The notes: generated by a model from the letters alone, not told the origin. A stretch of 64,000 nt of DNA from Octopus bimaculoides (GCF_001194135.2 NC_068982.1:83998240-84062239); one strand, 5' to 3'; shown: positions 118 through 44,339, counted from the stretch's first letter. Numbers and translations are program-made.

Positions 118-3100
118 GCGTAAAGGGGAAAATGAGCATGTCACTTTCCTCCACTCAACCAACTTTCAATCGTGCAATATTCATTCAGGACCAGATGTCG
201 GAGGAATTCTTCATGGTTGACACAGGTTCCTGTTGTAGCATTTGGCCACTTCGTCTTACTGTAGACAAACCTCGCCGCTCGGCGATTGTTTTGCACGCCG
301 TTGACTCGTCCCCGATTCCCACCTTTGGTCAGCTTTCTCTACGCTTAGACATCGGTCTTTGTAGAGACTTTCAATGGGTTTTTGTCATAGCTGACATTCC
401 GCATCCTGTTTTGGGTGCGGATTTCTTAAATCACTTCCAGTTGCTGGTAGATGTCCAACGTCGGAGGCTTGTCGACGATTCGACATCCCTTTCCACGCTG
501 GCAAGGAGCTCTACTAACTCCCCTCTTAGCCCAGCGTTTTTTATTGCCACTACTGGGGACGCTTTTCATTCTCTCTTAGCATCTTTTCTGGAGCTGGTGG
601 ACATCACTTTCAACCCGGCGAAGCCCGCGCATTCCACCCTCCATTACATCAAGATGACTGGACCACCCGTTTTTTCGCGCCCACGTCGTCTAACGCCTGA
701 CCGTCTTAAGACAGTCAAGGCCGAGTTTGAACACATGTTTCAACTCGGCCTCATTCACCCCTCCACCAGCCCATGGGCATCTCCTCTTCATTTGGCCCGT
801 AAAGGGGACACGGATTTTCGCCCAGTGGGGGACTATCGGTGACTTAATGCCGTGACGATAGCAGATCGCTATCCAATTAGGAACCTACAGGATTTCTTGG
901 CAAACCTGCATGGGTGCACCATTTTCTCTAAGATTGATCAGATACCAGTCAATCCGGAGGACGTTCCTAAGACAGCCATCACCACTCCCTTCGGCTGTTT
1001 TGAATTCCTGTTCATGAGTTTCGGTCTGCGTAATGCTACCAGCACCTTTCAANNNNNNNNNNNNNNNNNNNNNNNNNNNNNNNNNNNNNNNNNNNNNNNN
1101 NNNNNNNNNNNNNNNNNNNNNNNNNNNNNNNNNNNNNNNNNNNNNNNNNNNNNNNNNNNNNNNNNNNNNNNNNNNNNNNNNNNNNNNNNNNNNNNNNNNN
1201 NNNNNNNNNNNNNNNNNNNNNNNNNNNNNNNNNNNNNNNNNNNNNNNNNNNNNNNNNNNNNNNNNNNNNNNNNNNNNNNNNNNNNNNNNNNNNNNNNNNN
1301 NNNNNNNNNNNNNNNNNNNNNNNNNNNNNNNNNNNNNNNNNNNNNNNNNNNNNNNNNNNNNNNNNNNNNNNNNNNNNNNNNNNNNNNNNNNNNNNNNNNN
1401 NNNNNNNNNNNNNNNNNNNNNNNNNNNNNNNNNNNNNNNNNNNNNNNNNNNNNNNNNNNNNNNNNNNNNNNNNNNNNNNNNNNNNNNNNNNNNNNNNNNN
1501 NNNNNNNNNNNNNNNNNNNNNNNNNNNNNNNNNNNNNNNNNNNNNNNNNNNNNNNNNNNNNNNNNNNNNNNNNNNNNNNNNNNNNNNNNNNNNNNNNNNN
1601 NNNNNNNNNNNNNNNNNNNNNNNNNNNNNNNNNNNNNNNNNNNNNNNCATTCAACGCATCGCACCTCCAACTTCTTTAAAACAGTTGCGCCACTTCGTGG
1701 GATTGTCAATTTTTACAGAAGATTTATAAAGCGATGTGCTGATAAGCTTCTTCCATTAACTAGGCTACTGCAAGGCCATACTAAGAAGGATGCTCGACTC
1801 ACTCTTTCTGGTGAGGCGTTGTCAGCTTTTGAGTCCGTCAAACGGGAATTATCCTCCGTTCCTGTCCTTGCACATCCGGCCCCTGATGCCCCCCTTTCAT
1901 TATCTGTGGACGCATCAGATTCTGCGGTTGGTGCTGCCTTACACCACACCGTAGATAAAAACATACAACCTTTGGCTTTCTTTTCTTGCCAACTACAGCC
2001 TGCCGAGCACAGATATAGCACTTTTGATCATGAGCTATTAGCGATCTATCTGTCAGTTCGGCATTTCCAACATCAGCTCAAGGGACAGGAGTTTGTGATT
2101 TATACTGATCACAAGCCCCTCACTTTTGCTCTGTCCTCTAAAACAGACAAACTCTCTCCTCGTGCTTTTTGTCACCTGGATTTTGTTTCACAGTCTACAG
2201 GTGACATTCGTCATGTGCCAGGGAAAGAGAACATCCCAGCTGATGCTCTTTCATGACTCCCTGTGCATTCTATTTCCACTCCGGCGGTAATTGATTTGCT
2301 AGCAATTTCGCAGGAGCAAACTCCTTTGTCGAGTTTAGACTTAACTTCACCAAAATACCATACTTGTAAGTTTGCCTATCTTCCGCTCCCTTCCTCTGGT
2401 TCTCCCAGGCCCTTAGTGCCTGAGAACCATCAACGTTCTGTTTTTGATGCCCTTCATTCCTTGTCACACCCGGGCATCTCTGCGACAGTCAAACTTATTA
2501 CAGCTCGGTTTTTTTGGCCCAACATGCGGCAGTCAATTACCACTTGGGCATGCTCTTGCTTGAAGTGCCAGAGTGCAAAAGTCCACCGGCACATTCGTGC
2601 CCCACTTGGACAATTTCCATCTACTGAGGCCCGTTTTCGTCACGTCCACCTTGATTTGGTTGGACCATGGCCAGTGAGTCGCGAGTTCTCATATCTGTTA
2701 ACATGTGTCGATCGTTTCTCCCGCTAGCCAGAAGCCATTCCTATAGCTGATATTACTTCTGAGACTGTTGCTCAAGCCTTCGTGTCTGGCTGGATTTCTC
2801 GGTACGGTGTACCGTCCAGCCTGACCACAGATCGTGGCCGGCAATTTGAGGCCGCGCTCTTTTGTGACCTATCACGAATCTTGGGGGTGCATCGTATACA
2901 CACCACCAGCTACCATCCCGCTTCTAATGGGATGGTTGAGCGATTTCATAGGCAACTTAAGGCTGCCTTATGCGCCTGGCTCAACCCGCAGTCTTGGGTT
3001 GAATTTCTTCCGGTCGTCCTCCCTGGATGCCGGACGGCAGTCAAAGCTGACCTGGGTTTCTCCTTGGCAAAGCTTCTTTACAGTACCACACTGGCATTGC

Positions 3101-3453
3101 TTGGTACGATGGTGGTACCAGACTCGTCACAACCACCACATCCAGAGTCCTATGTTACTCAGTTACGGGAGTATTTCTCAAATCTTCCAGCTATGGGTCC
3201 CAGACAACAGTCACCTCCCTCTCAAGTGCCAGCAGACATTGAGTCTTGGTCTCATGTGTTTATTAGGGATGATTCTGTCAAAAGACCCCTTTTTTCTCCC
3301 TATAAAGGACCCTTTCGTGTGCTTTCTCGCACTCCAAAGTTCTTCAAGGTCGACGCTAATGGTCGTACAGAGATTGTGTCTGTCGACTGTCTGAAAAAGG
3401 CGTACGTTGACAAACCCTCAACTTCCGTGGACAACGTGCCCGCTTTTCAAACA

Positions 3454-3560
3454 CTGCACACACCACTGTCAACATCATTACCACCACACACACCACTGTC
3501 AACATCTTTACCACTGCATACACCAACATCAACACCATCACAAACACACACACCAGAAAC
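3454..3560 (+). repeat. ~30-bp degenerate tandem repeat encoding a Thr/Pro-rich integrase tail
   Basis: cacacaccactgtcaacatc(a/t)ttaccac occurs 2-3 times; peptide HTPLSTSLP repeats. Confidence 0.75.
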
Positions 3561-3665
3561 CACTCCACCTTCGTCGTGCGACAAAACTCAAGTGACCCTT
3601 ATGTCACTAGGTCTGGCCGGACAGTGCATTGGCCAAAGAAACTTTCCAAAACAATATACATTTGA

Positions 3666-4650
3666 CATGCTCTTTCCCTGTCTTCATGTCCTTAATTGCT
3701 TTGTCTACCAGAATACTGTCAATTCGGGTAGCTGGTCCCTCAGTTGGATCAGCCTTTGGCAGACTCTCCTCTTCCCATTCATTCTCTGCATTCAGCAATC
3801 TTTCATAATGGTATATCCAAGCCTCTTTCTTTGCTCTAATATTGTTCCACCATCATATTACTCTAGGTCTGGAAAGGACTTTGCACCAGCCACAGATTTG
3901 GTCTGTGGCACTCAGCAAGCTGTCTCTCAGGAATTCCCAGTTGCCCTCTATGTCAGAAGTCTGTAGCTCCTCCTCCCCATCATCAAATTTTTCAATGACA
4001 ATGTCCCTAAATCTCTGACCATATGAAGGGTTCATAAGCTTCCAAATCCTTTTTTTCCAGATTGGTCTGCTTCTTGGCAACCTAAAGTCACTAATACTAG
4101 TCTCTGCTGGTGGGTACATTTTTCAGCAGGGAGGGTCTTTGTGTTTAAGAGCAACCATGCATCCTGCTGTCTGGTGAGGATGAAATCAATCTAGCGAGCA
4201 GAGTCACCTGATTGATAGGTTATCAGATGGTTGGCTGGCTTTCTGAAGTTGGTGTTGCAGATCAATAAGTTATTTGCATCACAGAACTCCAGTAACCTAG
4301 TTCCCTCTTCATTTCTGGAACCGATTCCATGGCATCTATGTACACCATGGAAGATATCAGGTTGCCATCTGACATGCCTATTAAAATCTCCAGCTACAAA
4401 GATGAGATCATTGTCACTTGTTTTTGAGGTAGCCTGCAAAAGAATATTATAGAAGTGGTCCTTCTGTTCATTTGGTAGGCGAGTTTAAGCACTCTATCAC
4501 ACACCCTGACTACCTTTATGACTTTATCCACCCATTTCTTCGTAAGAAGTATGCCCACACCCCCTATTCCATCACTATTACCTTCCCAGAAGAGTTTATA
4601 CCTATGTGCCTTGCCTGTGAGGAACCTGGTTGAAGCTCCTCTTCACTTGA
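3666..4650 (-). mobile_element. RTE-clade LINE fragment (APE endonuclease plus linker), decayed
   Basis: FVAGDFNRHV...GSRNEEGTRLLEFCDANNLLICNTNFRKP and [25 protein letters not shown]; homologous to the copies at 24.7 kb and 37.2 kb. Confidence 0.9.
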
Positions 4651-4715: not shown

Positions 4716-6060
4716 TCACTCTTCAAATCCTGAAAACTGACTGCAGTCATCATAGCCCCATAACCAGAAAAATCATCAGGGTCGCCAATACTGTCTAAAG
4801 TGTCACTATCTTCAAACAGAATGTCATTTTCTGTGCTATCAAATGCATTATTGATGCCACATTTTTTAAAAGATTTTACTGCTACTTCAATTTTCAGTGT
4901 TCCATGATTTCAGGACCCACTCATACACCTGAGCAATTGTTGGCCTTTTCAAACAACCTGTTGGTGTTAGGTCATGGTCCTTGGCTCTCATCTACTGATT
5001 CCACTCTTCTTTCATAAATGCCTTAAAAGGATTGTTGATTGATACGTCCAGTGGTTATATTTGGCTTGTTAAACCACCAGGGATCACTGCAATTTTTGTT
5101 TTCAATTTCTGCACCCTCTCTTTAACAGCCTTTGTTTTGTGGGCATGAAACTGGTCCCACACAAGAAGGGATGTTTTTTTTTGAGGAGGCCACGGGAATA
5201 CCTTGACCAGACCTTATCTAGTCATAACTTCACTCCCTCTTCATCTATCCACCCCTTTGGATGGACATGAACAAAAATTCCACATAGAATTTTGTCTCTT
5301 GGTAAAATTTTCCTCTTGAAAATAAGTAGCAGTGGCAGTTTTGTTCCATCAGCACAACACAATAGTACCATTGGGTTTTCTCATGTCTAGATGTCTTTAC
5401 ACTTATGGTTTTGGACCCTTTAACATCCACTGTTCTATTTGATACCATATCAAACGTTAGTGACACCTCATCCATGTTTCTGCTCTGACCCAATTTGTTG
5501 ACAGCCTCTTTTCTTGCACTGATTATGAACCTGTAAAATTCAATCATTTTGTTATTATAATCTTCAGGCATTTTTTGTGCTATTCTTGCTTTCATTCTCA
5601 TTGCCAGTCTGTGCTGCTTCATAAATCTGTAACAAAGCTTAATGTACCATGGAAATCATCCAGACCTCATGCTGCTATCCTCACTTTTAATTCATTAATA
5701 ATCATTTTTACTGATACTGCAAGACTTGAATTTCTCTCTGCAACTATCCACTCCTTCATCTCTTACTCTAGATCTGGCCACTTAGCTGCAGTCTGATGCA
5801 GGCTTCATTTAAGTCTTGATGCAAGCTTCAACAGGTCCTCTTGTTTCTTCCAGTAGTGGACCATTTTCTCAGTTGGCAGTGCTCCAAATGCTTCTCTACA
5901 GCCCTGTTGCCATGCTGTTTAGCATACTCAATCACTTGTAGCTTGTAACCGATTGTGTAAGAGTGTCTTCTGCTTGAGGCTGTTATAGTAATGGTTTTGC
6001 TAAAAGTTTTAAGTAAAATCTTATGTAGTTGTGGATGACTCTTAATGTCAGCAGGTCCAG
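4716..6060 (-). mobile_element. pogo-superfamily DNA transposase pseudogene (Brinker-like DBD, CENP-B HTH, DDE_1)
   Basis: RRHSYTIGYKLQVIEYAKQHGNRAV; NMDEVSLTFDM..NRTV..KG.KTISVKT..HEK; downstream WDQFHAH and IPGGLTSQI-PLDVSINNPFK; ends SGFEE*. Frameshifted; termini not found. Confidence 0.85.
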
Positions 6061-6689
6061 GCTTACAGAGATCAAGGAGGAAGCCTATGTTGCTGTCTGA
6101 ACAAAACACATTTCAATAAAGAGAATGAGTAAGTGATGACTGAACACAACACATTTCATCACAGAAAGTGAGTAAGTGATTACAATAGTATTGTTATTAA
6201 TATTTGCTTGTAAACCCTTTTAACATACTGCAGTTTTATTTCTTTCATCACTTAATAATGTTCCCTTAAAGTCAGGTTATTTGAAGAGAGTGACAATACC
6301 GGTAATATAGATACACATGTAAAATATCACTCATCAGTTGCCTCATCTAACGGGAATGAATTTTTGTGATTGCATATATTTTAAAAAATTTTTGATACAT
6401 TTGTTTGTTTACTACTTTAACAAAGTATAATTTATACACTTCACTGAGCAGTCATATGCAGGAGTTCAGATTACTATCTAGCATCGATAATTTTCTTTTG
6501 GGGTTAGGATATACCTATGAAAAATGCAACCTTCGACCTCCAGGATGCATGGTAGATTTTCAAAACTTGTTTTAGGAAAAAAGTAACATCTTCAATGCCG
6601 AGAAATACTATATATATATGTTTATACACACACACACATATATAAATAGATATATATGTATATATATATATATATATATATACATATAT

Positions 6690-7306
6690 AAAGAAAACAG
6701 AAAATGGAGAAGTTCTGATGAACAACAATTGACTTACATCAATTATTATTTATTAATTCAATGCAAATAGACTGCATCTCATCTAACAGCTGTTTCTGCT
6801 TCCAATGTATTGCCATTGATATGCAAAAATATTGATCATATTTGGTAATAAAACTGATCTGAAACAAGGAGCTTGATCAGAGTGAAGAATAAATAAAGAA
6901 GAGCATAGAGAAGAAAAAGGGGAAAATTGAATATAGTTGTAATCATACCATTTTGCTTGTGTGTCTCTTTGGGCCATTAAGTAAAAGACTTTTACTTAAT
7001 GGCCCAAGGAGACTCACAAGCAGAATGGTATGATTACAACCATATTCAGCTTTTTCCTTTTTTTTCTCTATGCTCTTCTTCTTTATTTATTCTTCACTTC
7101 AATGAAGCTCCTTGTGTCAGATTGGTTTTATTACCAAACATGATTAATAGTTTAAATATTTTTGCATATCAGTGGCAAAACCATACAACATTGGAAGCAG
7201 AAACAGCTGTTAGATGGGATGCAGTTTATTTGCATTGAATTAATAAATAATAATTGATATAAGTCAACTGTTGTTCATCAGTACTTTTCCATTTTCTGTT
7301 TTCTTT
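6690..7306. repeat. ~617-bp imperfect palindrome (foldback) centred on 6988
   Basis: Centre gtaaaag-a-cttttac. The arms stay alignable out to aagaaaacagaaaatgg / ccattttctgttttctt with scattered substitutions and small indels. Confidence 0.95.
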
Positions 7307-7580
7307 AAATTTTGATTCTTGATAAGCCCATGTTAACATTATGAACATAATATTTTGCATATGTATGCCCATGGTTAAATATAGGTAATATACTAGTAGC
7401 GTAATGGATACTTCTATCCCTTAGACAGTTATTTTAACCTCTAACTCACCTAACCTATATATATTTATATATACATGTTAAAGGAAAGGGAAAACAAAAT
7501 CAAGGCAGGATGAGCATCTCAGGTCATTTAGAATATTTAATTAGAGTAAGGTGGATCAAAAAAGAAGTGTAAGTAATTAA

Positions 7581-7658
7581 TGTCTTACAGCTGTTTGGGG
7601 GATATCCCAAGTAATGGGTCAACATCCTCATACACTAGGTATACCATCATCAGAGACA
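7581..7658 (-). ncRNA. Degenerate type I hammerhead ribozyme motif in a Penelope-like terminal remnant
   Basis: Minus strand reads TGTCT-CTGATGA-...-CAAA-CAGCT-GTA-AGACA: 5-bp stem I and palindromic ACAGCTGT stem III, but the core GAAA is changed to CAAA. Confidence 0.6.
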
Positions 7659-8077
7659 GGGTGTGTATGCAGGAATGTTCCAGACAGAAAATTCACAGTA
7701 TATAAAAGAATAAAACAGTAGATAGAAGGATAAAGATAGAAGAATAAAGTTCACAGTTCATCTTGTTCCAGACAGTATAGCTCCTTAAGTATAATCCCAG
7801 TATAGTTCCTTAAGTATAGACCAAGGCATCATGATAGTCAGATAGATCAGAGAGAATGTGGGGTTGTGAGTGAGTGAAGAGAAGAGATAAACAAAAGAGA
7901 GAATAGTGAAAATGAGCATAAATATAAAAAGGATAAATAATGGAAATAAAAAGAATGAGAATGAAAGTAAAATAAAATAAAAGGTAAAAGGCCAATATTA
8001 TTCTTCATCAGGGTAGGTGAGTATATACTAGCCTTTTATTATTCTTTGTCAGGGTAGGTATGGTATATACCAACCTT

Positions 8078-8452
8078 TTACCTTGCTTACCAACCACATG
8101 GTTCCAGGTTCAGTCCCAGTGCATGGGATCTTCAGCAAGTGTCTTTTACTATAACCTTGGGCTGATCAAAGCCTTGTGAGTGGATTTCAAAGACAGAAAC
8201 TGAGAGAAGCCCATTGTATATATGTGTGCGTGTGTCTGTCTGCCTGTCTTTGCATTTATGTTTGTCCCCTATCACGGCTTGACAACCGGCATTGATGTGT
8301 TTACATCCCCATGACTTACTGGTTTGGTGAAAGAGACTGATAGAATAAGTACTAGGCTTAAGAAATGTTCTGGGGTTGATTTGTTCAACTAAAACCCTTC
8401 AAGGCAGTGCTCCAGCATGGCCACAGTCAAATGACTGAAACAAGTAAAAGAA
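8078..8452 (+). mobile_element. tRNA-derived SINE, family A
   Basis: ccaaccacatggttccaggttcagtccc head, aagccttgtgagtggattt...gaaactga core, gtgctccagcatggccacagtcaaatgactgaaacaagtaaaag tail, all shared with other copies in the window. Confidence 0.9.
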
Positions 8453-8504
8453 TATATATATATATATTCATAGACATCTCTCTCTCTATGTGGATATATA
8501 TATA

Positions 8505-8871
8505 CAGGGGTTGGACAAAATAATGGAAACACCTAGCATCATACCATCATAATTTTGAAATATCTATAAAACCGTCAAAAGCTTGTTTATTCTTATGTTT
8601 TTTGATTTATTATTAGTGTTACTTAATATGTTTTGCTAAAATTGCTGGGGTTTTGGTTTTTTTTCGGATATCATCAGAAAAAGGTAATTAAAATTCATTA
8701 AAATGACAGATCTATTGGACTTTCAAAGAGGTGAAATTGTTGGTGCATGTATAGCAGGCACTAGCATAATGAAAAAAGCCGAAATGGTGTATCAAGAAGT
8801 ACTGTCTTGAAAGTAATGACAGCCTTTGAGAAAGAGGGAAAAACCTCCTCGCTGGAGGAAAACTCTGGAAG
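8505..8871 (+). mobile_element. Tc1-like DNA transposon 5' end (truncated by gap)
   Basis: TA|CAGGGGTTGGACAAAATAATGGAAACACC terminal repeat, then MTDLLDFQRGEIVGA...VMTAFEKEGKTSS (Tc1 N-terminal HTH-like). Confidence 0.85.
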
Positions 8872-9376
8872 NNNNNNNNNNNNNNNNNNNNNNNNNNNNN
8901 NNNNNNNNNNNNNNNNNNNNNNNNNNNNNNNNNNNNNNNNNNNNNNNNNNNNNNNNNNNNNNNNNNNNNNNNNNNNNNNNNNNNNNNNNNNNNNNNNNNN
9001 NNNNNNNNNNNNNNNNNNNNNNNNNNNNNNNNNNNNNNNNNNNNNNNNNNNNNNNNNNNNNNNNNNNNNNNNNNNNNNNNNNNNNNNNNNNNNNNNNNNN
9101 NNNNNNNNNNNNNNNNNNNNNNNNNNNNNNNNNNNNNNNNNNNNNNNNNNNNNNNNNNNNNNNNNNNNNNNNNNNNNNNNNNNNNNNNNNNNNNNNNNNN
9201 NNNNNNNNNNNNNNNNNNNNNNNNNNNNNNNNNNNNNNNNNNNNNNNNNNNNNNNNNNNNNNNNNNNNNNNNNNNNNNNNNNNNNNNNNNNNNNNNNNNN
9301 NNNNNNNNNNNNNNNNNNNNNNNNNNNNNNNNNNNNNNNNNNNNNNNNNNNNNNNNNNNNNNNNNNNNNNNNNNAC

Positions 9377-9459
9377 ATACATACAAAGGTCTTCTTTCAG
9401 TTTCCATTGACCAAATTTACTCACAAGGCTTTAGTCAGCCTTACAATATGGTAGAAGAT
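9377..9459 (-). mobile_element. SINE family A fragment
   Basis: Reverse complement of the ctttcagtttcc...tcacaaggctt core next to a gap. Confidence 0.7.
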
Positions 9460-10296
9460 CAAGATGGGAAGGATGACTTCCCTTTGCAAATACAGACAGG
9501 ACACATATGTGTCAATAGCCAGCTGGAGGAGATATTCTCTTGGGGTTAAAAGCAACAGTAACATCTTCCCTTAGGGGTCAGCCACATTTAAGTGGCAAAT
9601 ATACTTCACCTTGTCATGCAGTTACTGTTAATACCTCGTTCAGAGAGTTAACATTGCTTGTTTTCACTTTTTTATAGAGTTAATGTTTTGTATTTTACCC
9701 ACACATATTTTTTCTTGTTTTCTCCGCCCCCTCCCCTACTAGTTTTACTGTGCATCTATAGACATGTACATGGAACCTTATGTGTGCGCTTGTGAATGTG
9801 TGCGGGTATGTGCATATATAGATGTATGTACGTGCGTATATAGATATATGTGCGTGCATGTAAAAATATGCACATATAGACACGTTTTAACCATATAGCA
9901 TTTTCACACTTTCTTCTGTATTTTGCTTTTAGCCCTATGATTTTTTTTTGCATGCATGTGTATGAGTGTGAGATTGTTGAGTGCCTGTGCGTGTGGGTGT
10001 GTATGCGGGATACCCGTGTATGTGGGTATATATATGGATATGTACATATATGTATAGTTTTTGGCGAGTATGTGGGTGAGCATGTGTGCGTTTCAAGCAA
10101 GGGTGGTTTAGTATATACACATAGGCGAATGTACGGATTGGTGCGCTTACACAAACACTATAGACTTTTCTACTCCCTTACCTTTACTCCCTCCCCTTAC
10201 TTAACGGTCTATAGCTCTTTTGTCTTAATAACGGTCAACCACACAGTAATATCCCTTTGTTTAACGGTCATTTTTCACAGGAATTTTCAATGGCTA

Positions 10297-10358
10297 GATA
10301 ACTGAAGAGATGCTGGCCGTGGGTTCCCACCCCGGCATCCGAAACTTAGAGTTTTATC
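10297..10358 (+). ncRNA. Type I hammerhead ribozyme (near-canonical)
   Basis: GATAA-CTGAAGA-GATGCTGG[loop]CCGGCATC-C-GAAA-CT[TAG]AG-TT-TTATC. Stem I 5 bp, stem II 8 bp with one extra C, stem III 3 bp, GUU cleavage triplet (cut predicted after 10353). Confidence 0.75.
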
Positions 10359-10544
10359 ATGGCTACCGGATAAGTGTTACATATTTTTACAGATGTATAT
10401 AATATATATGTTATATNNNNNNNNNNNNNNNNNNNNNNNNNNNNNNNNNNNNNNNNNNNNNNNNNNNNNNNNNNNNNNNNNNNNNNNNNNNNNNNNNNNN
10501 NNNNNNNNNNNNNNNNCTGTCATATATATATGTATATGTATATA

Positions 10545-10756
10545 TATGTGTATGTGTTTGTTCCCTTAGCATTGCTTGACAACCGATGCTGGCGTGCTTA
10601 TGTCCCCATCACTTAGCGGTTCGGCAAAAGAGACTGATAGAATAAGTACTAGGCTTACAAAAAATAAGTCCTGGGGTTGATTAGCTCTACTAAAAAGGCG
10701 GTGCTCCAGCATGGCCACAGTCAAATGACTGAAACAAGTAAAAGAGTAAAAGAGTA
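10545..10756 (+). mobile_element. SINE family A, 3' half
   Basis: cttgacaaccgatgctgg...ggcggtgctccagcatggcc...taaaagagtaaaagag. Confidence 0.9.
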
Positions 10757-10760
10757 TATA

Positions 10761-10951
10761 TAATTCAATTTGGGGGGATTAATTGATATGCGGGTATTCT
10801 ATTTGAGTTTATACAAAAAATAACCTAATGAGTATATCTGAAAGTAAACCCATGGTATCAGTTTGCATATCACGAAGTAATACTTAAAAGATGTAACCAA
10901 AATTACCAGCAAAGTATATATTATACTTCATTAATTATCTCCTACTTTAGT
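10761..10951 (+). repeat. Left arm of an inverted repeat pair (partner 12603-12793)
   Basis: taattcaatttggggg...gagtatatctgaaagtaaac...ctactttag matches the reverse complement of 12603-12793. Confidence 0.9.
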
Positions 10952-11601
10952 CTATTCAACTGCTTTAGAAATAAAATTATGTGGTTATTTGATTCAGAGG
11001 TTGGGGGTTCAGTGACTTCATTTTACTAAATGTAAAATTACTCTGGTGCCTACATGTAACTCCACATTCATTATGTGTATTTAATAATTCATCCCTAGAC
11101 TGTAGTAATTTCATAAATTCTATTATGCATAATAAACACATTTTATTCCCAATATTATAGGAGTGGGCTCTCAATTAAGGGTGTACTTTCTTTTTCTAAC
11201 AAATTATATATATATCCCAATATAGGTAAATTTGAATTTAAGAATAGAGGATAATTTAAAATTTAAAATTAAACTATGTATAGTGTAATTACCCCACTTG
11301 GTACTAATTACCTATAAATATCTATATTTCCCTGCTATCTTCTTCCTCTAATCACCATTTTAGTACCAGCAAAAAAAAAAAAAAAAAAATGTATTTGAAT
11401 TTAAACACAGACATTTTTATTCTGATGTATAATTTTATATCTCACATTCTGTATTTGACATATACTTGATTTTACATGATTGATATATATGCTAATTCAT
11501 ATTTTTAATGTATAATTTATAAATTTTAATTCTTAATATTACTAAGTACTAGTTTTATTTTTAATTTTTAATTCTTAATTTTTAATCTTTAATGCTTAAT
11601 T

Positions 11602-12389
11602 GGAATCTTTGTGAATTGACGGGCACCACTTGTTTTCTTAACGAAACACTTTCAAACTTGGGATACTGGTAGAATGTGTCATATAAAACATCTTTTTCTC
11701 TTAGCCTTCGTAACAAAAATTTCAATATTGCAAGTTATTTCATGTTAAAGTTGTCGTATTTCTGTAATTTCAACCAATCACTGACGTCTATTCAGGTGAA
11801 TACAGTTACTGCTGTTTTTGTAAACAATAATTTTTGCCGGTGTCAAGATCGTTATTCCCTGGTAATTATATTGTTCCCTAGTAAGGGTTTAGGGTTTTAG
11901 GGTTAGGGTTCAAGTTTTAGAGTTAGGGTTAGGGTTTTAAGGTTTTAGGGTTAAAGTTAGGGTTATGAGTTAGGTTATGGCAAAAATAATCATAACCCTA
12001 ACCCTAACACCCGAACCCTAACCTTAAAACCCTAAAACTAAAACCAGTACAAATGCACGAACGATGTTATAAATAACAGTACCACTGATAGTTGTTGTTG
12101 ACAAACAATGGCACTAATTTTATTCAAGAGAAAAGATCCCATTACACCGCACAACGTGTGGTGTTCACAATTCACAGCAGTAATTGTTTTCACCTCAATA
12201 GACATCAGTGATTGGTTGAAATTACCGAAATACGACAATTTTTTACATGAAATAACTTTGAATACAAAAATTTTTATCTGTTCTATAACACAAAATATCC
12301 AAGTATACGAAGTTTGAAAGTGTTTCGGTACCAAAAACACTACATAAAACATTAATGAAAAGTGGTGCCCGTCAATTCAGAAAGATCCC
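11602..12389. mobile_element. Non-autonomous foldback/MITE-like element with an internal telomere-like core
   Basis: Termini gg(a/g)atcttt(g/c)tgaattgacgggcaccact in inverted orientation; ~230-bp imperfect arms; TTAATT on both flanks (11596-11601 and 12390-12395). Confidence 0.85.
11884..12045. repeat. Degenerate (TTAGGG)n followed by (CCCTAA)n, head-to-head
   Basis: gggtttagggttttagggttaggg... at 11884-11978; taaccctaaccctaac... at 11991-12045. Confidence 0.9.
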
Positions 12390-12602
12390 TTAATTATATT
12401 GCTTATTATTTAAAGGGATGCAAATTTAGATATATAATATTTTGAAAAAGAATCTGAAGTTGTGTTGGAATAATTGTAAATCTGATGATTGCATATATGT
12501 ATTTATATATGTGTATATATATGTATACAGTTGTGTATATGTATATATATTGTAATCTTCCAATACGTGTAGTTCCTTCATATTTAATAAATTTAAGTAT
12601 TA

Positions 12603-12793
12603 ACTAAAGTAGGAGATAATTAATGAAGTATAATATATACCCTGCTGGTAATTTTGGTTATATCCTTTAAGTATTATTTCAGGATGTGCAAACTGATACC
12701 ATGAGTTTACTTTCAGATATACTCATTAGGTTATCTTTTGAATTATCTCAAATAGAATACCTGCATATCGATCAATCCCCCAAAATTGAATTA
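12603..12793 (-). repeat. Right arm of an inverted repeat pair (partner 10761-10951)
   Basis: Reverse complement aligns with 10761-10951. Confidence 0.9.
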
Positions 12794-12966
12794 ATATCGA
12801 CTTTTATCAGATACTTGTATATTTATAGATAAATATATAAATATATGATAAATAAGACTCCCAAGGTACGATATGTAGATGCATATAATGCTGAAGGGTT
12901 GTACTTGATTGATTTGGAAATTTGTTTTCCCAAATTATTTAAATTAATTATATATATATATACATC

Positions 12967-13002
<36 letters not shown>

Positions 13003-13939
13003 ACCCTCTCTCTCTCCCACTCTCTCTCTCTNNNNNNNNNNNNNNNNNNNNNNNNNNNNNNNNNNNNNNNNNNNNNNNNNNNNNNNNNNNNNNNNNNNNN
13101 NNNNNNNNNNNNNNNNNNNNNNNNNNNNNNNNNNNNNNNNNNNNNNNNNNNNNNNNNNNNNNNNNNNNNNNNNNNNNNNNNNNNNNNNNNNNNNNNNNNN
13201 NNNNNNNNNNNNNNNNNNNNNTAAAGAGAGAATTTTGGAAGTGATGTACAGATATTGTCTGCTTAGAATAATAAGATATTCAGAATGTTGGTTGATTGTA
13301 TATATTTTATTTATACTTTCAGACCTTCCATTACTGGATTTATCAAAAAATGGTTTAAATTTAGATTTCTTGGCCTTTTTATATATAAAAAATTTTGTGG
13401 GCTTTGCCAGGGAAAAAAAAAAAAATTTAATGGATGGGGAGGTAAACAGGCATGGCTTTGTATTGGTATGGTCAGACTTGTTTGTTTAGTACTTAGTGAC
13501 CTTTTAGGATGGGGAAGGAAAAAGAATTTTTGTATTTGAATTGGTCAAGGTTTTAATTGTAAAACCAAATGTTGTTTTGACTTTCTTCAGTAAAAATTAT
13601 ATTCACATTTCCAGGTCTTGTTTCTTTATTCTTTTGTATTTATTACTGTAGAGGAAGTAAAGAGGTGTGGTTTTTGTATTAGTGTGGTCAGATTTTTGTA
13701 GTGGTCAGAGTTCTTAATTGAAAAAGTAGATGTTTGCTTTTGACTTCCTTCAGGGAAAATTATAAATGCCTTTACAGGTTTTGTTTTTTATTCTTTTGTA
13801 TTCATTAAAGAATAGTTGCATGGATGTGGTCAAATTGCTTTGATTGAAATTCTAGATGTTTTCCAAAGAGTGATTTTTGAAGTGTGAGGTGTTCAGGATT
13901 GCAAAGCAGTGTATCAGAGAGAATAGAAATGTGTGAATG

Positions 13940-15500
13940 GTTAATGGTATGCTTGCACTTAGTGACTCAGAGAAGAAAGATGCATGGAAGTGCCACTATG
14001 AAAGGTTACTAAATGTGGAAAATGAATGGGAGAAGGAGAGAGTCTTTCAAATATCGAACCAATTGAGGGACCAGCCATCAGAGTTGATAGCAGGCAATTA
14101 ATGATATGAAGACTGGGAAAGCCTCTGGACCACTTGGTATCACTGCCAAGATGATCAAAATATCAGACCAAGTCATGAAAGTTACTGAGAGGGTTATAGC
14201 TCAATTGATTTGGAATAGAATTAAACTAGATGCAGTTTGGTTTTGTGCTTGGAAAGAGTACCAAAGATGCTATGTTCCTGGTGAGACAGCTGCAGGAAAA
14301 GTATTTGGACAAAAGTAGACCGTTGTATTTAGCTTTCGTCAACCTAAAGAAAGCTTTTGACAGTTCCCCGCTCTGTTATATGGTGGTCCCTAAGGAAGTT
14401 GGGAGTAGAGGAGTGGCTTGTTTGAGCTGTACAAGCCATGTGCAGTGGTGCTGTCAGTAAGGCAAGAGTCAGCCACGGATACAGTGATGAATTTAGCATA
14501 CAAGTAGGGGTTCTCAGCATACTCTTATTCGTTATAGTCTTCCAGGCCATAACAGAGGAATTCAAAACTGGATGCTGATGACCTTGCTCTTATTGCAGGA
14601 TCTGTAGCAGAATTGGGGAAGAAATTCCAGGTGTGGAAGCAAAACTTGGAATCAAAGGGCCTTAAAGTTAACCTAGCAAAGACCAAATTTGTTGTTAGCA
14701 AGAAAGATTCTCTTTCTGTCAGGTAAATTGCCTTGCTCAGTATGTTGGAAAGGAGTTGGAAGTAATTCCATTTGCTGCACCCAGTGTAAGCTATTGACTC
14801 ATAAGAGATGCTGTGGAATCACAGGTACATTAACAGGTAAAGTCACCATGTGTGTGCAGGAACTATAAACACTAAGAGAGCATGGGACTTAGATTCTCTC
14901 AAATGCCCAGGTGGTTCTCTTGAGGTTGTAGATAGTTTATGTTTCCTAGGTGACCAAATTATCAAGGGTGGAGGATGCTCTGAAAGTATTGTTTCTAGAA
15001 TAAGAATAAGATGGAGGAAGTTCAGAGAGCTATTATTCCTGTTGGCAACAAAAGGACACTCTCTCAGAATGAGAGGTGGATTGTATGATGCTTGTGTGCA
15101 AACAACTATATCACATGGTAGTGAGACATGGGCTCTGAATGCTGGAAACATGTGTAGACTGAAAAGAATTGAAGGCTGCATGCTCCGCTGAATATGCAAC
15201 ATCAATATGCATGTATGATAAAGTAAAAACATATGGAGAGAAAAGTTGGGCATAAGAGGAATCAAATGCAGCATGGAAGAAAGAAAACTAGATTGGTTTG
15301 GACATGTGATGTGTATGAGTAAAGACAGATGTATAAAGAAGTGTTTGTCACTGAAAGTGGAGGATACCCACGGACGAGGGAGACCCAGGAAGACATGGGA
15401 TAAAGTGGTGAAGGCTGTTCTCAGGATGTTGGGCCTCACAGGAAATGACAATGGATTAAGATGTCTAGCAATATGAAGTTCTTGAGAAGAAACTGAGTTC
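13940..15500 (+). mobile_element. RTE LINE RT/3' portion, decayed
   Basis: MQFGFVLGKSTKDAMFLVRQLQEKYLDK..PLYLAFVNLKKAFD; gctgatgac (ADD); LEVVDSLCFLG; HGSETWAL; GRGRPRKTW. Confidence 0.9.
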
Positions 15501-16809: not shown

Positions 16810-16903
16810 CACAGACATATGTATGTACATGAGTGCGTACATGTATGTACCTGTATAGGCACAGCTGCATATTGACATGATGATGATTGTGTGCCAGTAT
16901 GTA

Positions 16904-16952
<49 letters not shown>

Positions 16953-17055
16953 CTTTCCTATAAGTAGGTTATCGCCCTTGGCTAGGCGGCACTCCATGTA
17001 GACAATTAAACTTCCACAGACTATCCACGCTATTGTTATTGTTTTACGTCTTATC

Positions 17056-17328
17056 ATGGATATAAAGCAGCTCGATGATTCAGTTATCGAAGTACTTACT
17101 GTGCTTGAGTTAAAGAAATATTTAAGATTATATGGACAGTATGTTACTGGAAGAAAGGCGGACTTGACTGAAAGGTTGAAAGGTATAAAAATTCTGTCGA
17201 TGAAGAATGTCAACAAAGTAAATTCATCGGACGATAAGTCTGAAGTATCGGACGATAAGTCTGAAGTATCGGACGATACTTCAGACAGGAATGAAGTATT
17301 GCCTGATCCCAATCTGCTTTCAGCATAG
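17056..17328 (+). CDS. Transposon-borne SAP-domain ORF (truncated)
   Basis: LTVLELKKYLRLYGQYVTGRKADLTERL fits the SAP consensus (L.V.EL+..L...G....G.K..L..RL). It also has a 21-bp tandem repeat (SDDKSEV). The stop may be a TGG-to-TAG change (LPDPNLLSA*LSE). Confidence 0.7.
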   Translation: MDIKQLDDSVIEVLTVLELKKYLRLYGQYVTGRKADLTERLKGIKILSMKNVNKVNSSDDKSEVSDDKSEVSDDTSDRNEVLPDPNLLSA

Positions 17329-17455
17329 CTTTCAGAAACCATTCACTGATTTGGCCATGAGCATGATGAGGTGTAGAAGAGGTAGGGACAGTCACACTAT
17401 AAAGTCTAATAATTAGAGGAATATTAGATTCAATGCTGTAAATTTATTATTTAAT

Positions 17456-17527
<72 letters not shown>

Positions 17528-18170
17528 NNNNNNNNNNNNNNNNNNNNNNNNNNNNNNNNNNNNNNNNNNNNNNNNNNNNNNNNNNNNNNNNNNNNNNNNN
17601 NNNNNNNNNNNNNNNNNNNNNNNNNNNNNNNNNNNNNNNNNNNNNNNNNNNNNNNNNNNNNNNNNNNNNNNNNNNNNNNNNNNNNNNNNNNNNNNNNNNN
17701 NNNNNNNNNNNNNNNNNNNNNNNNNNNNNNNNNNNNNNNNNNNNNNNNNNNNNNNNNNNNNNNNNNNNNNNNNNNNNNNNNNNNNNNNNNNNNNNNNNNN
17801 NNNNNNNNNNNNNNNNNNNNNNNNNNNNNNNNNNNNNNNNNNNNNNNNNNNNNNNNNNNNNNNNNNNNNNNNNNNNNNNNNNNNNNNNNNNNNNNNNNNN
17901 NNNNNNNNNNNNNNNNNNNNNNNNNNNNNNNNNNNNNNNNNNNNNNNNNNNNNNNNNNNNNNNNNNNNNNNNNNNNNNNNNNNNNNNNNNNNNNNNNNNN
18001 NNNNNNNNNNNNNNNNNNNNNNNNNNNNNNNNNNNNNNNNNNNNNNNNNNNNNNNNNNNNNNNNNNNNNNNNNNNNNNNNNNNNNNNNNNNNNNNNNNNN
18101 NNNNNNNNNNNNNNNNNNNNNNNNNNNNNNNNNNNNNNNNNNNNNNNNNNNNNNNNNNNNNNNNNNNNNN

Positions 18171-18322
18171 TCTTTCCTCACAAGTCTCGATCTCTGAAGC
18201 CAAATACGACGAATAGCTACGTTTGCAGGATATCTATGTAGTGAAATAACTTTGCCATCTACATTCTTCCCTCTATAGTGGCTGCATATACAGCAGTATT
18301 TGCATGATTTCTTCGGAGACAT
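18171..18322 (-). CDS. THAP zinc-finger N-terminus (runs into gap)
   Basis: MSPKKSCKYCCICSHY...VISLHRYP.....RRIW matches the THAP C..C / (F/L)H.(F/Y)P / W signature. Confidence 0.75.
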
Positions 18323-18571
18323 ATTAACCTGTCAGTACAGTATGTGAGTCGTTAGTCTGCGGAAGTTAAAGCAAGTCACTGAGCATGCGTACATGTCATA
18401 CGGGAGAGTTCCAATCAGGGGTGGATAACAACCTTATAGGAACCCCCTATATGCATGGGGGTGATGAGTGCATGTGTGTATGTATAGTTGGAATTTACAC
18501 AAAAACAAAGCAAAAGATGAAGATGGGTATGTAAACAACAAATTAGTTTAATGCTCAGGAAGCGAGAAATT

Positions 18572-40100: not shown

Positions 40101-40270
40101 AAGCCTCTCAACAATCTCACCAGACCTACCTTTCAATGTGCCAACATTAAGTGTGCCAACTCTGAGGGTATGGAAGGTGTAGGCCTGCAAGACCCTGGGA
40201 TGGGGGACAGCAGCGTCATGTACCTGAAAGGAAAGCACGTATTTGGCAAAACTCATAAATATACAATACC
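37158..40270 (-). mobile_element. Near full-length RTE LINE, copy B (decayed, internal deletions)
   Basis: VGTLNVGTLKGRSGEIVERLE...GVGILLAEKWV; VAGDFNEH...NFRKP...DYIL; MQFG..P..S.TDAIFLVRQLQEKY; collinear with copy A. Confidence 0.95.
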
Positions 40271-40649
40271 CTTCAACCTGCATACACTACACCATAATTT
40301 ATGCGCTACATAATCACAGTGTAACAAATTAATAACCACCACAAAATGATTAATAAAAATGGAGATGGGACTATGGATAACCAAGATAACCTTACTGAGA
40401 AAAAGACAGTGAATAATAATACTACTTCTACCAATAATTAATGGTGTGTATAACACTGACAATATTCTACAGTATGAGGGAAATGAATCTGATGGACCAT
40501 CAGTGTATCATATAATATTACTTGATTTGATGTTCCATACTAGGGCGAAAATACCCCATGTTGGTTATGCTTGAAAGAATGTAAACAAATCCTGTTATTA
40601 AATAGACAGAATGAGGTGTTTACCACACATATCCACAGATTCTTCAAAA

Positions 40650-43284: not shown

Positions 43285-43964
43285 CTATAAAGGCTGGGAG
43301 TTACATAAAGTTCTTAATGTCATATCTTTATAATTAAACTGTGGAGTTTCCAGTGGAGTAAGTACTTCATCAACATAAGTTTGATACTCATTGGCAGTTG
43401 TTTTCTTGGATTTAATTTCAAGCTTTTTTTCCAGGTTTTCAATTTTAAGACGTAACAGTTCATTTTCTTCTTGGTAACTTTTTTGTAAGGATTGGTAATT
43501 TTCCACTTCTTTTAATAGTAATAAAATATGCTTGCGGAGATCCTCATTTTGAATTTGCAGTTCTTCAATAACTTGTTTGTCATCTTTTGGCATTTTGGTC
43601 ATAACAGGTTGTGCTGGAGCATGAATGCGAAAATTTATACTATCAGATAAAGTATCTAAGTTTTTAGGTGCATGAGACTGGTTTCGACTTATGAGATACT
43701 GAATTAAAGAATCATTTTCTTCAATAGTACGATAAAGAGTGACAATACGGGGTTCAAAATCTGCTTTTGGACTATTTGGTGTACTCTGAGGTAATCCTGA
43801 AGTAGCTGAATGAGAAGGATCTGATTTCTTTAATTCTTCTTGCTGGACATTCTTTTCTTTTTGTCGAATTATTTCTTGTTGTCGATTATGGTGACGATGC
43901 TGTAGTTGGAGTGAATCTTTTGCTTGTTCCGAATTTACTTCAGACATAGCCTCTAATACACACT
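43285..43964 (-). CDS. NRBF2: NRBF2 (nuclear receptor-binding factor 2 / Atg38-like), terminal coding exon
   Basis: Acceptor tattttgcag at 43965. EAMSEVNSEQAKDSLQLQ, NDSLIQYL, KMPKDDKQVIEELQIQNEDLRKHI and LTPLETPQF parallel NRBF2 EAMKLTQSEQAHLSLELQ, PDTLLYLL, KAPKDDKTIIEEQ..IADLKRHV and LPPL, as recalled from the human protein. Confidence 0.9.
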
Positions 43965-44339
43965 CTGCAAAATAAGCCATAAAAATAAATTCATAAGTAA
44001 AAAACAGACAGAAAGGTAAGTATATATGGACATGGATGTAGTTAGAACTTCAATTGTACTGTATTGCATAAATTATTTTCTATCATAAATTGCAATACAA
44101 CAAAGCACTGTGAGGTAGTTTTAAACAAAACTGTAAAAGATATTTAATTAGTGTAATAGCAATATCACCATCATCATCAGTCTTCTCTTCTTCCTCTTAC
44201 TCTCCCCCTTCTTCTCCTATTCTAGGTTTCTCACTTACTACCATGATAACCCACTCCATCCTCTCTCACACAACCCTGAACTTAACATTAAGCTAGCATG
44301 ACTTAGACATTCCATTCTTAACATCTTAGATAAAAACTG

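What the first reader, a model, noticed from the sequence alone, without database searches (positions are those of the whole stretch)
16950..18447. Compact element with convergent SAP-domain and THAP-domain genes driven from symmetric ends
Seen: a + strand SAP ORF and a - strand THAP ORF face each other. Each is preceded by the same inverted subterminal motif (aacttcc[a/g]cagacta) and enclosed by short TIRs with TA flanks. CpGs are retained, suggesting recent arrival. Known: ISL2EU-type (PIF/Harbinger-related) transposons encode a THAP-DDE transposase plus a second protein with a YqaJ exonuclease. Inference: a deletion derivative of such a two-gene element, with SAP as the N-terminus of the second protein. 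DDE and YqaJ are not visible because of deletion or the gap, so Kolobok or a new group cannot be excluded.
Basis: partly seen in the sequence, partly recalled or inferred. Interest (0 to 1): 0.7.

Follow-up and report, generated by a model that had tools for sequence, protein, structure and literature searches.

The report
Broken ISL2EU transposon copy in octopus
This is a decayed, internally shortened copy of a known kind of two-gene "cut-and-paste" jumping gene (ISL2EU type) in the Octopus bimaculoides genome, so it is ordinary, although its ends carry a short motif that is conserved across molluscs.

Summary
At 16949-18448 a + strand SAP ORF (17056-17328) and a - strand THAP ORF (18322 down to 18171, cut by the gap) converge. 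Each lies behind an inverted AACTTCCRCAGACTA motif and a TTCCTATAAG..GTTATC terminal inverted repeat. CpG observed/expected is 0.7-1.0 in the element against 0.31 for the window.

The window is Octopus bimaculoides. The SAP ORF has at least 13 paralogues there. A profile built from them finds 450-600 aa mollusc proteins with SAP, a weak SWIM match, and YqaJ. In Sinanodonta, Mya, Mytilus and Pinctada that gene is followed by a convergent HTH_Tnp_4-DDE_Tnp_4 transposase gene, with a THAP N-terminus in the first three. The pair sits between TIRs that align with the octopus ends. The window THAP piece is 70% identical to the Sinanodonta THAP exon. Mya copies show the ISL2EU "AT" target duplication.

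No DDE or YqaJ sequence is visible in the window. The SAP frame is already broken. Full-length relatives need about 3.9 kb where the window has 824 bp (643 of them N). It is therefore most likely a dead, internally deleted copy. Kolobok, P element, Harbinger proper and Spy are rejected.

One modest extra result: CTTCC, usually CTTCCG (ETS-like), is invariant in 12 ends of 6 species. At left ends it lies 55-56 nt from the TIR core.

The parts
16947..16948 (.). Possible left AT target-site duplication. It is ambiguous because it lies inside the (TA)n run 16920-16949.
   Evidence: Sequence. AT TSD in Mya copies. ISL2EU definition.
16949..16974 (+). Left terminal inverted repeat: A-AGGC-TTCCTATAAG-TAG-GTTATC. 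The first base is 16949 or 16950.
   Evidence: It aligns with the left ends of the Sinanodonta, Mya and Mytilus elements.
16982..16992 (+). Left-end-specific block CTAGGCGGCAC, shared with the left ends of the Sinanodonta and Pinctada elements.
   Evidence: Alignments A5 and A7.
17009..17023 (+). Left subterminal motif AACTTCCACAGACTA. The CTTCC core is 62 nt from the terminus and 45 nt before the ATG.
   Evidence: It is also kept in another octopus copy (P0013).
17056..17328 (+). Remnant of exon 1 of the SAP-SWIM-YqaJ gene: 90-aa ORF ending in a premature stop. Homology to full-length proteins fades at about 17325-17346.
17226..17288 (+). 21-bp tandem duplication (two exact units and a 71% third) inside the SAP ORF. 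It is private to this copy.
   Evidence: Paralogues have one SDDKSEV unit fewer than the window.
17347..17459 (.). Internal stretch with no detectable homology to the full-length relatives. It may be degenerate element sequence or a deletion/insertion junction.
   Evidence: tblastn.
17460..17527 (.). (CA)n(TA)n microsatellite abutting the gap. It is the probable cause of the assembly break.
17528..18170 (.). Assembly gap, 643 N (estimated length). It hides, or stands in place of, the rest of the THAP exon and any internal sequence.
18171..18322 (-). First 50 codons of the THAP-HTH-DDE transposase gene. The THAP zinc finger has its N-terminal CxxC, the HRYP motif and the conserved Trp. The frame is open at the gap edge.
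18353..18367 (-). Right subterminal motif AACTTCCGCAGACTA. The CTTCC core is 83 nt from the terminus and 43 nt before the ATG.
18383..18388 (.). GCATGC core of a block specific to right ends (ACGCATGCTC on the - strand). The Sinanodonta (TGCGCATGCGT) and Mya (GGCATGCGCA) right ends share it. It resembles an NRF1 site.
   Evidence: Alignment A6. The NRF1 resemblance is from general knowledge.
18403..18412 (-). Right-end-specific block GGAACTCTCC, conserved in the right ends of all six species.
   Evidence: Alignment A7.
18424..18448 (-). Right terminal inverted repeat, read on the - strand as A-GGGGG-TTCCTATAAG-GTT-GTTATC. The last base is 18447 or 18448.
   Evidence: The boundary is confirmed by paralogue P0122, which diverges from the window after 18450.
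18449..18450 (.). Possible right AT target-site duplication.
   Evidence: P0122 boundary. Mya copies.

Best explanation
The element at 16949-18448 is a dead, non-autonomous, internally deleted copy of an ISL2EU-type DNA transposon (PIF/Harbinger-related 'PHIS' superfamily) in Octopus bimaculoides.

Intact relatives in other molluscs are 4.6-6.5 kb long and carry two convergent genes between asymmetric ends. The left gene encodes a protein with a SAP DNA-binding motif, a SWIM-like zinc finger and a YqaJ (lambda-exonuclease-like) nuclease. The right gene encodes the THAP-HTH_Tnp_4-DDE_Tnp_4 transposase.

Inferred from the family, not shown here: the transposase binds the terminal repeats, cuts the element out and pastes it into an AT dinucleotide, which becomes duplicated. 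The YqaJ protein probably processes DNA ends or helps repair.

Each gene starts about 85-170 nt inside its terminus. The leader holds the TIR, an end-specific conserved block and an invariant CTTCC(G) motif. That motif is most likely an ETS-type promoter element, a second transposase-binding site, or both (inference).

The window copy keeps only both leaders, about 90 codons of the SAP gene (with a premature stop, a 21-bp duplication and a 27-bp deletion) and 50 codons of THAP. It could move only if an intact relative supplied transposase.
For: Host and copy number:
- The SAP ORF hits 13 O. bimaculoides proteins (identity 73-95%).
- THAP hits one more.
- The first 63 aa of the window copy match the family consensus at 61/63.

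Identity of the SAP gene:
- The paralogue profile finds 110 proteins. The long ones carry SAP plus YqaJ, and P0017 also has a weak SWIM match.
- P0006 aligns with P0017 at 40% identity from the SAP motif to the first SWIM cysteines.

Identity of the THAP gene:
- It is 70% identical over 50 aa to the Sinanodonta THAP exon.
- The next Sinanodonta ORF scores DDE_Tnp_4 149 bits and HTH_Tnp_4 53 bits.

Architecture:
- The convergent gene pair is seen in Sinanodonta (2 copies, 99.3% identical).
- Mya arenaria has 8 copies at 99.9% identity; 7 have an annotated convergent partner gene.
- Mytilus and Pinctada also have it.

Ends:
- Octopus left and right ends align with the left and right ends of the relatives, including end-specific blocks.
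- The TSD is AT in Mya, as W-AT-[element]-AT-W, as published for ISL2EU.

Co-occurrence within octopus:
- Gene models P0015 and P0122 join the SWIM-like exon to the + strand reading of window 18370-18450, which is the right terminus.

Deletion:
- No exon 2, YqaJ or DDE is visible.
- The Sinanodonta equivalents of window 17346 and 18171 lie about 3.9 kb apart. In the window they are 824 bp apart.
Against: - No other octopus genomic DNA could be read. Co-occurrence within the species therefore rests on UniProt gene models. The TSD and the existence of a full-length octopus copy are untested.
- The gap length is only an estimate.
- DDE and YqaJ are inferred from relatives that are only 40-70% identical.
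- The left flank is a TA microsatellite, so the exact left boundary is uncertain by one base.
- The TIR begins A-GG rather than the 'usually GG' of the published ISL2EU logo.
- The roles proposed for the CTTCCG motif and for the YqaJ protein are not shown by any result here.
Confidence: 0.87

Rival explanations
1. The copy is really full length (4-6 kb) and potentially autonomous. Under this reading the gap is grossly underestimated and hides the SWIM-YqaJ exons and the HTH-DDE exons.
For: Gap sizes are only estimates. The THAP frame is still open at the gap edge. CpG is retained and the copy is 61/63 identical to the consensus, so it is young.
Against: The SAP gene is already dead in the visible part. 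It has a stop at 17326-17328 and a 27-bp deletion relative to its paralogues. Homology is lost after about 17346, where relatives continue one open exon to about aa 180. A microsatellite follows. About 3.9 kb would have to hide in a gap estimated at 643 bp.
Confidence: 0.07
2. Two separate partial copies, a left-end fragment and a right-end fragment, were brought together by scaffolding or by independent nearby insertions. On this reading it is not one element.
For: A gap and a microsatellite separate the halves. Homology on the left stops about 180 bp before the gap. SAP-side pieces are far more often annotated in the genome than THAP-side pieces (13 against 1).
Against: Order, strands and end types (L on the left, R on the right, genes convergent) are exactly those of intact relatives. 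Both outer flanks are the same kind of TG/TA-rich low-complexity DNA with TATA next to the termini. This arrangement within 1.5 kb is unlikely for independent fragments.
Confidence: 0.06
3. The element belongs to another THAP-bearing transposon superfamily (Kolobok or P element), or is a host gene pair.
For: A THAP domain alone does not discriminate between these.
Against: The THAP exon is 70% identical to the first exon of DDE_Tnp_4 transposases. There is no TTAA or 8-bp duplication at the ends. The partner gene is of the YqaJ type. There are many truncated, near-identical paralogues.
Confidence: 0.01

Closest known systems
ISL2EU group of the PHIS (PIF/Harbinger-ISL2EU-Spy) superfamily of DNA transposons (Repbase; Han et al. 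2014, PMC4122938; Zhang et al. 2015, PMC4482050)
   Same: It has a THAP N-terminus on a transposase whose relatives carry HTH_Tnp_4 and DDE_Tnp_4. The second gene is of the YqaJ exonuclease type. A 2-bp AT-rich target duplication is compatible. The TIRs are short with GG near the tip. The host is an animal. Relatives are 4.6-6.5 kb, against a published mean of about 4.8 kb.
   Different: This copy lacks both catalytic domains (it is a deletion derivative). The TIR tip is A-GG / A-AG rather than GG. The flank is T-AT-A rather than the published A-AT-T preference. The SAP plus SWIM-like N-terminal module of the YqaJ protein and the invariant CTTCCG subterminal motif are not mentioned in the papers read.
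PIF/Harbinger proper
   Same: Relatives have the same DDE_Tnp_4 transposase fold and HTH_Tnp_4. It is also a two-gene element with an AT-rich target.
   Different: Harbinger has a Myb/SANT partner protein, a 3-bp TWA duplication and no THAP domain.
Spy
   Same: It is the sister clade of ISL2EU transposases and is found in invertebrates, including oysters.
   Different: Spy has one gene, no THAP, no TSD, and inserts in AAATTT.
Kolobok and P elements
   Same: Their transposases have an N-terminal THAP domain.
   Different: They have different catalytic domains, TSDs of TTAA or 8 bp, and no YqaJ partner gene. This statement rests on general knowledge of the Repbase classification.

Membership tests
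ISL2EU | Transposase with an N-terminal THAP domain | tested here: met
   Window ORF 18322-18171: Pfam THAP E=0.012, N-terminal half only. Paralogue P0014 scores 30.1 bits against a gathering score of 23.9. The window fragment is 70% identical to the Sinanodonta THAP exon.
ISL2EU | DDE_Tnp_4 (IS5/Harbinger-like) catalytic domain with an HTH in the same protein | tested here: inconclusive
   It is not visible in the window and could be deleted or hidden by the gap. It is present in the homologous gene of Sinanodonta (DDE_Tnp_4 149 bits, HTH_Tnp_4 53 bits), Mya, Mytilus and Pinctada.
ISL2EU | Second gene encoding a YqaJ exonuclease-domain protein | tested here: inconclusive
   Only the N-terminal ~90 aa (SAP) are in the window. 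The YqaJ part is absent from the visible sequence. Full-length homologues found with the octopus profile carry YqaJ at 35-69 bits.
ISL2EU | 2-bp target-site duplication, typically AT | tested here: inconclusive
   The window flanks ...TATAT-AT|A...T|AT-ATG fit AT or TA because of the (TA)n context. Seven of eight Mya copies show W-AT-[element]-AT-W; L007 has a changed right flank.
ISL2EU | Short TIRs, usually beginning GG | tested here: met
   The tips are A-AGGC.../A-GGGGG..., with a 10+6 nt shared core. GG sits at positions 2-3 or 3-4, not at the very first base.
ISL2EU | Both genes and both ends belong to one element (co-occurrence elsewhere) | tested here: met
   Convergent pairs lie between alignable TIRs in Sinanodonta, Mya and Mytilus; Pinctada has the same pair with more divergent ends. 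Octopus gene models P0015 and P0122 link the SWIM exon to the right terminus.
Kolobok | TTAA target duplication and a Kolobok-type transposase | tested here: not met
   There is no TTAA at either end. The THAP exon is orthologous to the first exon of DDE_Tnp_4 transposases.
PIF/Harbinger proper | Myb/SANT partner protein and a 3-bp TWA duplication | tested here: not met
   The partner gene is SAP-SWIM-YqaJ. Mya flanks show 2-bp AT.
Spy | Single gene, no TSD, insertion between AAA and TTT | tested here: not met
   There are two genes. The flanks are not AAA/TTT.

The most novel reading that the evidence does not exclude
The invariant CTTCCG motif reads (C/G)CGGAAGT on the other strand, which is the optimal ETS/GABP-type site. 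It is found at both ends of six mollusc ISL2EU families. It may be a host-factor-dependent promoter element built into each terminus at a fixed distance from the TIR. On the transposase side it may act together with an NRF1-like GCATGCG box. The element would then borrow ubiquitous 'housekeeping' transcription factors to drive both inward-facing genes. The same site might also help position the transposition complex. A further possibility is that the truncated SAP-only or THAP-only peptides of deleted octopus copies act as repressors, as the KP protein does for P elements.
Probability: 0.3. Interest if true: 0.35.

Novelty: new member of a known kind. Interest (0 to 1): 0.2.

Why it matters
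For genome annotation, it assigns a set of O. bimaculoides "SAP domain-containing" and "THAP-type" UniProt gene models to fragments of one ISL2EU transposon family rather than to host genes.

For transposon biology, it adds a cephalopod member to a small superfamily group; the 2015 survey lists 14 animal species. It documents the SAP plus SWIM-like N-terminal module of the YqaJ partner protein. It points to a testable cis-element (CTTCCG) conserved at both ends across bivalves, gastropods and a cephalopod. The near-identical 6.5-kb Mya arenaria copies found on the way look recently active and would be the natural material for experiments.

None of this changes current understanding of how such elements work.

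Tried and rejected
- Octopus genomic DNA for other copies: exact look-ups of P0014, P0006 and the window's own SAP ORF found nothing on record. Genome-wide TIR pairing, the TSD census and the search for a full-length octopus copy could therefore not be done.
- Second exon (SWIM-like) or any DDE/YqaJ remnant elsewhere in the 64-kb window: tblastn and blastn found none, and there is no second copy of either half.
- Literature: no paper in the library mentions ISL2EU together with octopus. A search for YqaJ + SWIM + transposon gave nothing relevant.
- A reading frame across the gap was rejected as meaningless. The long '291-aa' and '250-aa' ORFs in the list are N-runs.
- The inverted microsatellites flanking the left half ((TG)n(TA)n at 16900-16949 and (CA)n(TA)n at 17460-17527) were considered as a sign of rearrangement. 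Such repeats are everywhere in this window, so no weight was given to them.
- Horizontal-transfer-level identity: the closest non-octopus relatives are only 40% (SAP-SWIM) and 70% (THAP) identical at the protein level. Nothing suggests recent transfer. The metagenome and viral DNA collections were not scanned because they were judged unlikely to hold cephalopod DNA.
- Kolobok, P element, Harbinger proper, Spy and a domesticated gene pair were rejected (see the membership test).

Full report
**What is in the sequence**

The window is eukaryotic. It has 11 N-gaps, 37% GC and CpG observed/expected of 0.31. It comes from Octopus bimaculoides, since all close protein hits are UniProt entries of that species.

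Between 16949/16950 and 18447/18448 lie the following features:
- a + strand ORF of 90 aa (17056-17328);
- a - strand ORF whose first 50 codons (18322 down to 18171) run into the assembly gap at 17528-18170.

The Pfam results are:
- The first ORF scores SAP at E=4.2e-4 and 20.3 bits, just under the gathering score of 23.9.
- The second scores THAP at E=0.012 over profile positions 1-38 of 87. Only the N-terminal half of the domain is visible.
- At family level both pass. Octopus paralogues P0001 and P0003 score 25.4 and 24.4 bits for SAP, and P0014 scores 30.1 bits for THAP.
- The window copy scores lower for SAP because it has Leu where all paralogues have Pro.

- A TTCCTATAAG..GTTATC core occurs in inverted orientation at 16955-16973 and 18424-18442.
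- AACTTCC[A/G]CAGACTA occurs at 17009-17023 (+) and 18353-18367 (-). These are the only two matches in 64 kb.
- This 14/15 inverted match is reached by 1 of 2000 shuffles of the right leader.
- CpG observed/expected is 0.80-0.99 (left part) and 0.70 (right part), against 0.18-0.28 in the flanks.

**The gap**

The two ORFs are on opposite strands, so no frame has to cross the gap. The long 'ORFs' listed across it are runs of X. Continuity cannot be proven from the window.

What can be said is this:
- On the left the gap abuts a (CA)n(TA)n microsatellite (17460-17527), a likely reason for the assembly break.
- On the right the gap cuts the THAP exon in mid-domain. Paralogue P0014 continues for 31 more residues from exactly that point.
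- Homology of the left part to full-length relatives fades at about 17325-17346. The stretch 17347-17459 matches nothing.

**What the SAP ORF is**

It has at least 13 paralogues in O. bimaculoides, 63-151 aa long and 73-95% identical. The longer ones continue into a second segment...HVHSIEYHDVSESCSHCIVRCLVIPSIPTSNQKKNPDHRVWVIMSNVTGNVHSADCNC.

A profile of these paralogues was searched against 1.84 billion representative proteins and found 110 hits. The long hits (420-599 aa) come from:
- Sinanodonta woodiana;
- Haliotis;
- Gigantopelta;
- Mya;
- Mercenaria.

Most have SAP at the N-terminus and YqaJ (PF09588, 35-69 bits) at the C-terminus. P0017 also has a weak SWIM match at the point where the octopus segment ends. 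P0006 aligns with P0017 at 40% identity from the SAP motif to the first SWIM cysteines.

**What the THAP ORF is, and the whole element**

Around the Sinanodonta gene (L001 10001-12110, +) the next gene is convergent (12353-14346, -). It encodes THAP plus HTH_Tnp_4 plus DDE_Tnp_4. Its own ORFs score DDE_Tnp_4 149 bits, HTH_Tnp_4 53 bits and THAP 34.6 bits. Its THAP exon is 70% identical to the window fragment over all 50 residues.

The pair is bounded by 41-nt inverted repeats, TATAGGGCATTCCAATAAG.... A second copy is 99.3% identical over 4.58 kb.

The same convergent layout occurs elsewhere:
- Mya arenaria has eight copies of about 6.49 kb at 99.9% identity. Seven carry an annotated convergent partner gene; none was called in L009.
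- Mytilus galloprovincialis has it.
- Pinctada imbricata has it, although no THAP hit is recorded for that gene model.
- In Haliotis cracherodii the partner gene is not annotated, but the inverted motif is present 5.3 kb downstream.

**The ends compared**

The octopus left and right ends align with the left and right ends of the relatives:
- The TIR core TTCC-N-ATAA is shared.
- Left ends share a TAGG.GGC.C block.
- Right ends share GGAACTCTYC. In three species they also share an insert with GCATGCG.
- The window's two ends are therefore of the L and R type, in the right order and orientation.

The most conserved non-coding feature is CTTCC:
- It is invariant in 12 of 12 ends from six species. 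The following G is present in 11 of 12.
- With a common register, it lies 62 nt from the terminus at the left ends of four species. That is 55-56 nt from the TTCC core.
- At the right ends it lies 83, 83, 74 and 75 nt from the terminus.
- Its distance to the ATG varies from 24 to 108 nt.

**Target duplication**

In the Mya copies the flanks read W-AT-[TGTCC...GGACA]-AT-W. One tandem pair shares a single AT. This matches the published ISL2EU duplication: AT, with target A|AT|T.

In Sinanodonta both copies read T-AT-[AGGGC...GCCCT]-AT-A. The window reads the same way if the element is taken as 16949-18448. Because the left flank is (TA)n, TA with element 16950-18447 fits equally well.

Octopus paralogue P0122 is identical to the + strand translation of the window's right end up to ...GTPY (18450) and then diverges. 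This places the right boundary at 18447-18450.

**Co-occurrence within octopus**

No other octopus DNA could be fetched.

Two gene models, P0015 (A0A0L8HP24) and P0122 (A0A0L8HXA0), join the SWIM-like segment directly to SKSLSMRTCHTGEFQSGVDN.... That peptide is the + strand reading of window 18370-18429 and onward, i.e. the right terminal ~80 bp. The SAP-side gene and the THAP-side terminus therefore occur together, on the expected strand, in at least two more copies.

Whether that junction is a genomic deletion or a predicted splice is not known. P0013 shows that the left leader, including the motif, is kept in another copy.

**State of this copy**

The SAP frame is broken in several ways:
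- a stop at 17326-17328;
- a 27-bp deletion (KQKLISPLG) relative to the paralogues;
- a private 21-bp duplication.

Relatives keep one open exon to about residue 180. The Sinanodonta positions equivalent to window 17346 and 18171 are about 3.9 kb apart, and the window has 824 bp there, of which 643 are N. Unless the gap estimate is wrong by several kb, this is an internally deleted, non-autonomous copy. In any case it is not an intact one.

It is fairly young. It matches the family consensus at 61 of 63 residues, other copies match at 58-62 of 63, and CpGs are retained.

**How it works (inference from the family)**

The THAP-HTH-DDE transposase recognises the ends, excises the element and inserts it at AT. 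The SAP-SWIM-YqaJ protein is a DNA-binding 5'-3' exonuclease-type enzyme that plausibly processes ends or assists repair.

The CTTCCG motif reads (C/G)CGGAAGT on the other strand. From general knowledge this is the optimal ETS-family site, and GCGCATGCG resembles an NRF1 site. Both are typical of TATA-less promoters, so a promoter role upstream of each inward-facing gene is attractive. The constant spacing from the terminus, with variable spacing from the ATG, equally suggests a role in the terminal protein-DNA complex. I rate promoter about 0.5, transposase-binding about 0.3, and both or other about 0.2. Nothing here tests this.

**Comparison and verdict**

The two-gene content, THAP, YqaJ, the AT duplication and the animal host define ISL2EU (PMC4482050, PMC4122938). 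Every feature testable in the window or its relatives fits. Kolobok, P element, Harbinger proper and Spy each fail a defining feature.

The closest relatives are only 40-70% identical in protein, so there is no sign of recent horizontal transfer.

No paper in the library links ISL2EU and octopus. This is a new member of a known kind and an ordinary decayed transposon copy. The interest is low. The main side value is the conserved end architecture and the apparently active Mya family.

Noticed in passing
L003-L010 (Mya arenaria GCA_026914265.1), element about 5914-12398 in each locus: Eight copies of a 6.49-kb ISL2EU element are 99.9% identical; six have an annotated HTH-DDE partner gene. This suggests very recent or ongoing transposition. 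In L004 two copies sit head to tail and share one AT dinucleotide.
   Followed up: partly
Alignment A7; window 17011-17016 and 18361-18366; L001, L005, L011, L012, L013: CTTCC(G), which is ETS-like as CGGAAG on the other strand, is invariant in 12 ends of six mollusc ISL2EU families. It lies 62 nt from the left terminus in four species, while its distance to the ATG varies from 24 to 108 nt. Right-end distances fall into two classes (83 and 74-75 nt) about one helical turn apart.
   Followed up: partly
O. bimaculoides proteins P0015 (A0A0L8HP24) and P0122 (A0A0L8HXA0), compared with window 18370-18450: These gene models fuse the SWIM-like exon to the translated right terminus at the same junction, just outside the right CTTCCG motif. 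This could be an amplified deletion-derivative subfamily or a splice prediction.
   Followed up: partly
O. bimaculoides protein P0016 (A0A0L8I7X3, 278 aa): This gene model joins the transposon's SAP exon and part of the SWIM-like segment to a Kazal-type protease-inhibitor domain and an acidic tail. It is either a chimeric annotation or exonisation of a transposon fragment.
   Followed up: no
window 17226-17288: A 21-bp unit (ATCGGACGATAAGTCTGAAGT) is present twice exactly, plus a 71% third unit, inside the SAP ORF. Paralogues have one unit fewer.
   Followed up: yes
window 132-3966 (+): LTR-retrotransposon pol region with RT-RNase H (100 bits) and integrase zinc-binding (62 bits) domains. It is interrupted by the gap at 1053-1647.
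   Followed up: partly
window 46200-47449 (-) and 39792-40283 (-): A LINE-type endonuclease ORF (Exo_endo_phos_2 at 26.9 bits, just under the cut-off) is split by the gap at 47062-47100. A second endonuclease-like fragment at 39792-40283 has no Pfam hit.
   Followed up: partly
window 43285-43980 (-): A 231-aa ORF has weak NRBF2 MIT and NRBF2 matches, both below the cut-offs. It may be a host exon.
   Followed up: no
window 52502-52948 (+): A 148-aa ORF whose sequence (...YIPDLAPCELWLFSKLKENL...) looks like the C-terminal part of a mariner-type transposase. Pfam gave no hit at E<=0.001.
   Followed up: partly
L012 (Haliotis cracherodii) 8222-11352: No transposase gene is annotated downstream of the SAP-YqaJ gene. 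An inverted copy of the ACTTCCGCCGAG motif ends at 11352, so an unannotated or decayed transposase gene probably lies between.
   Followed up: no
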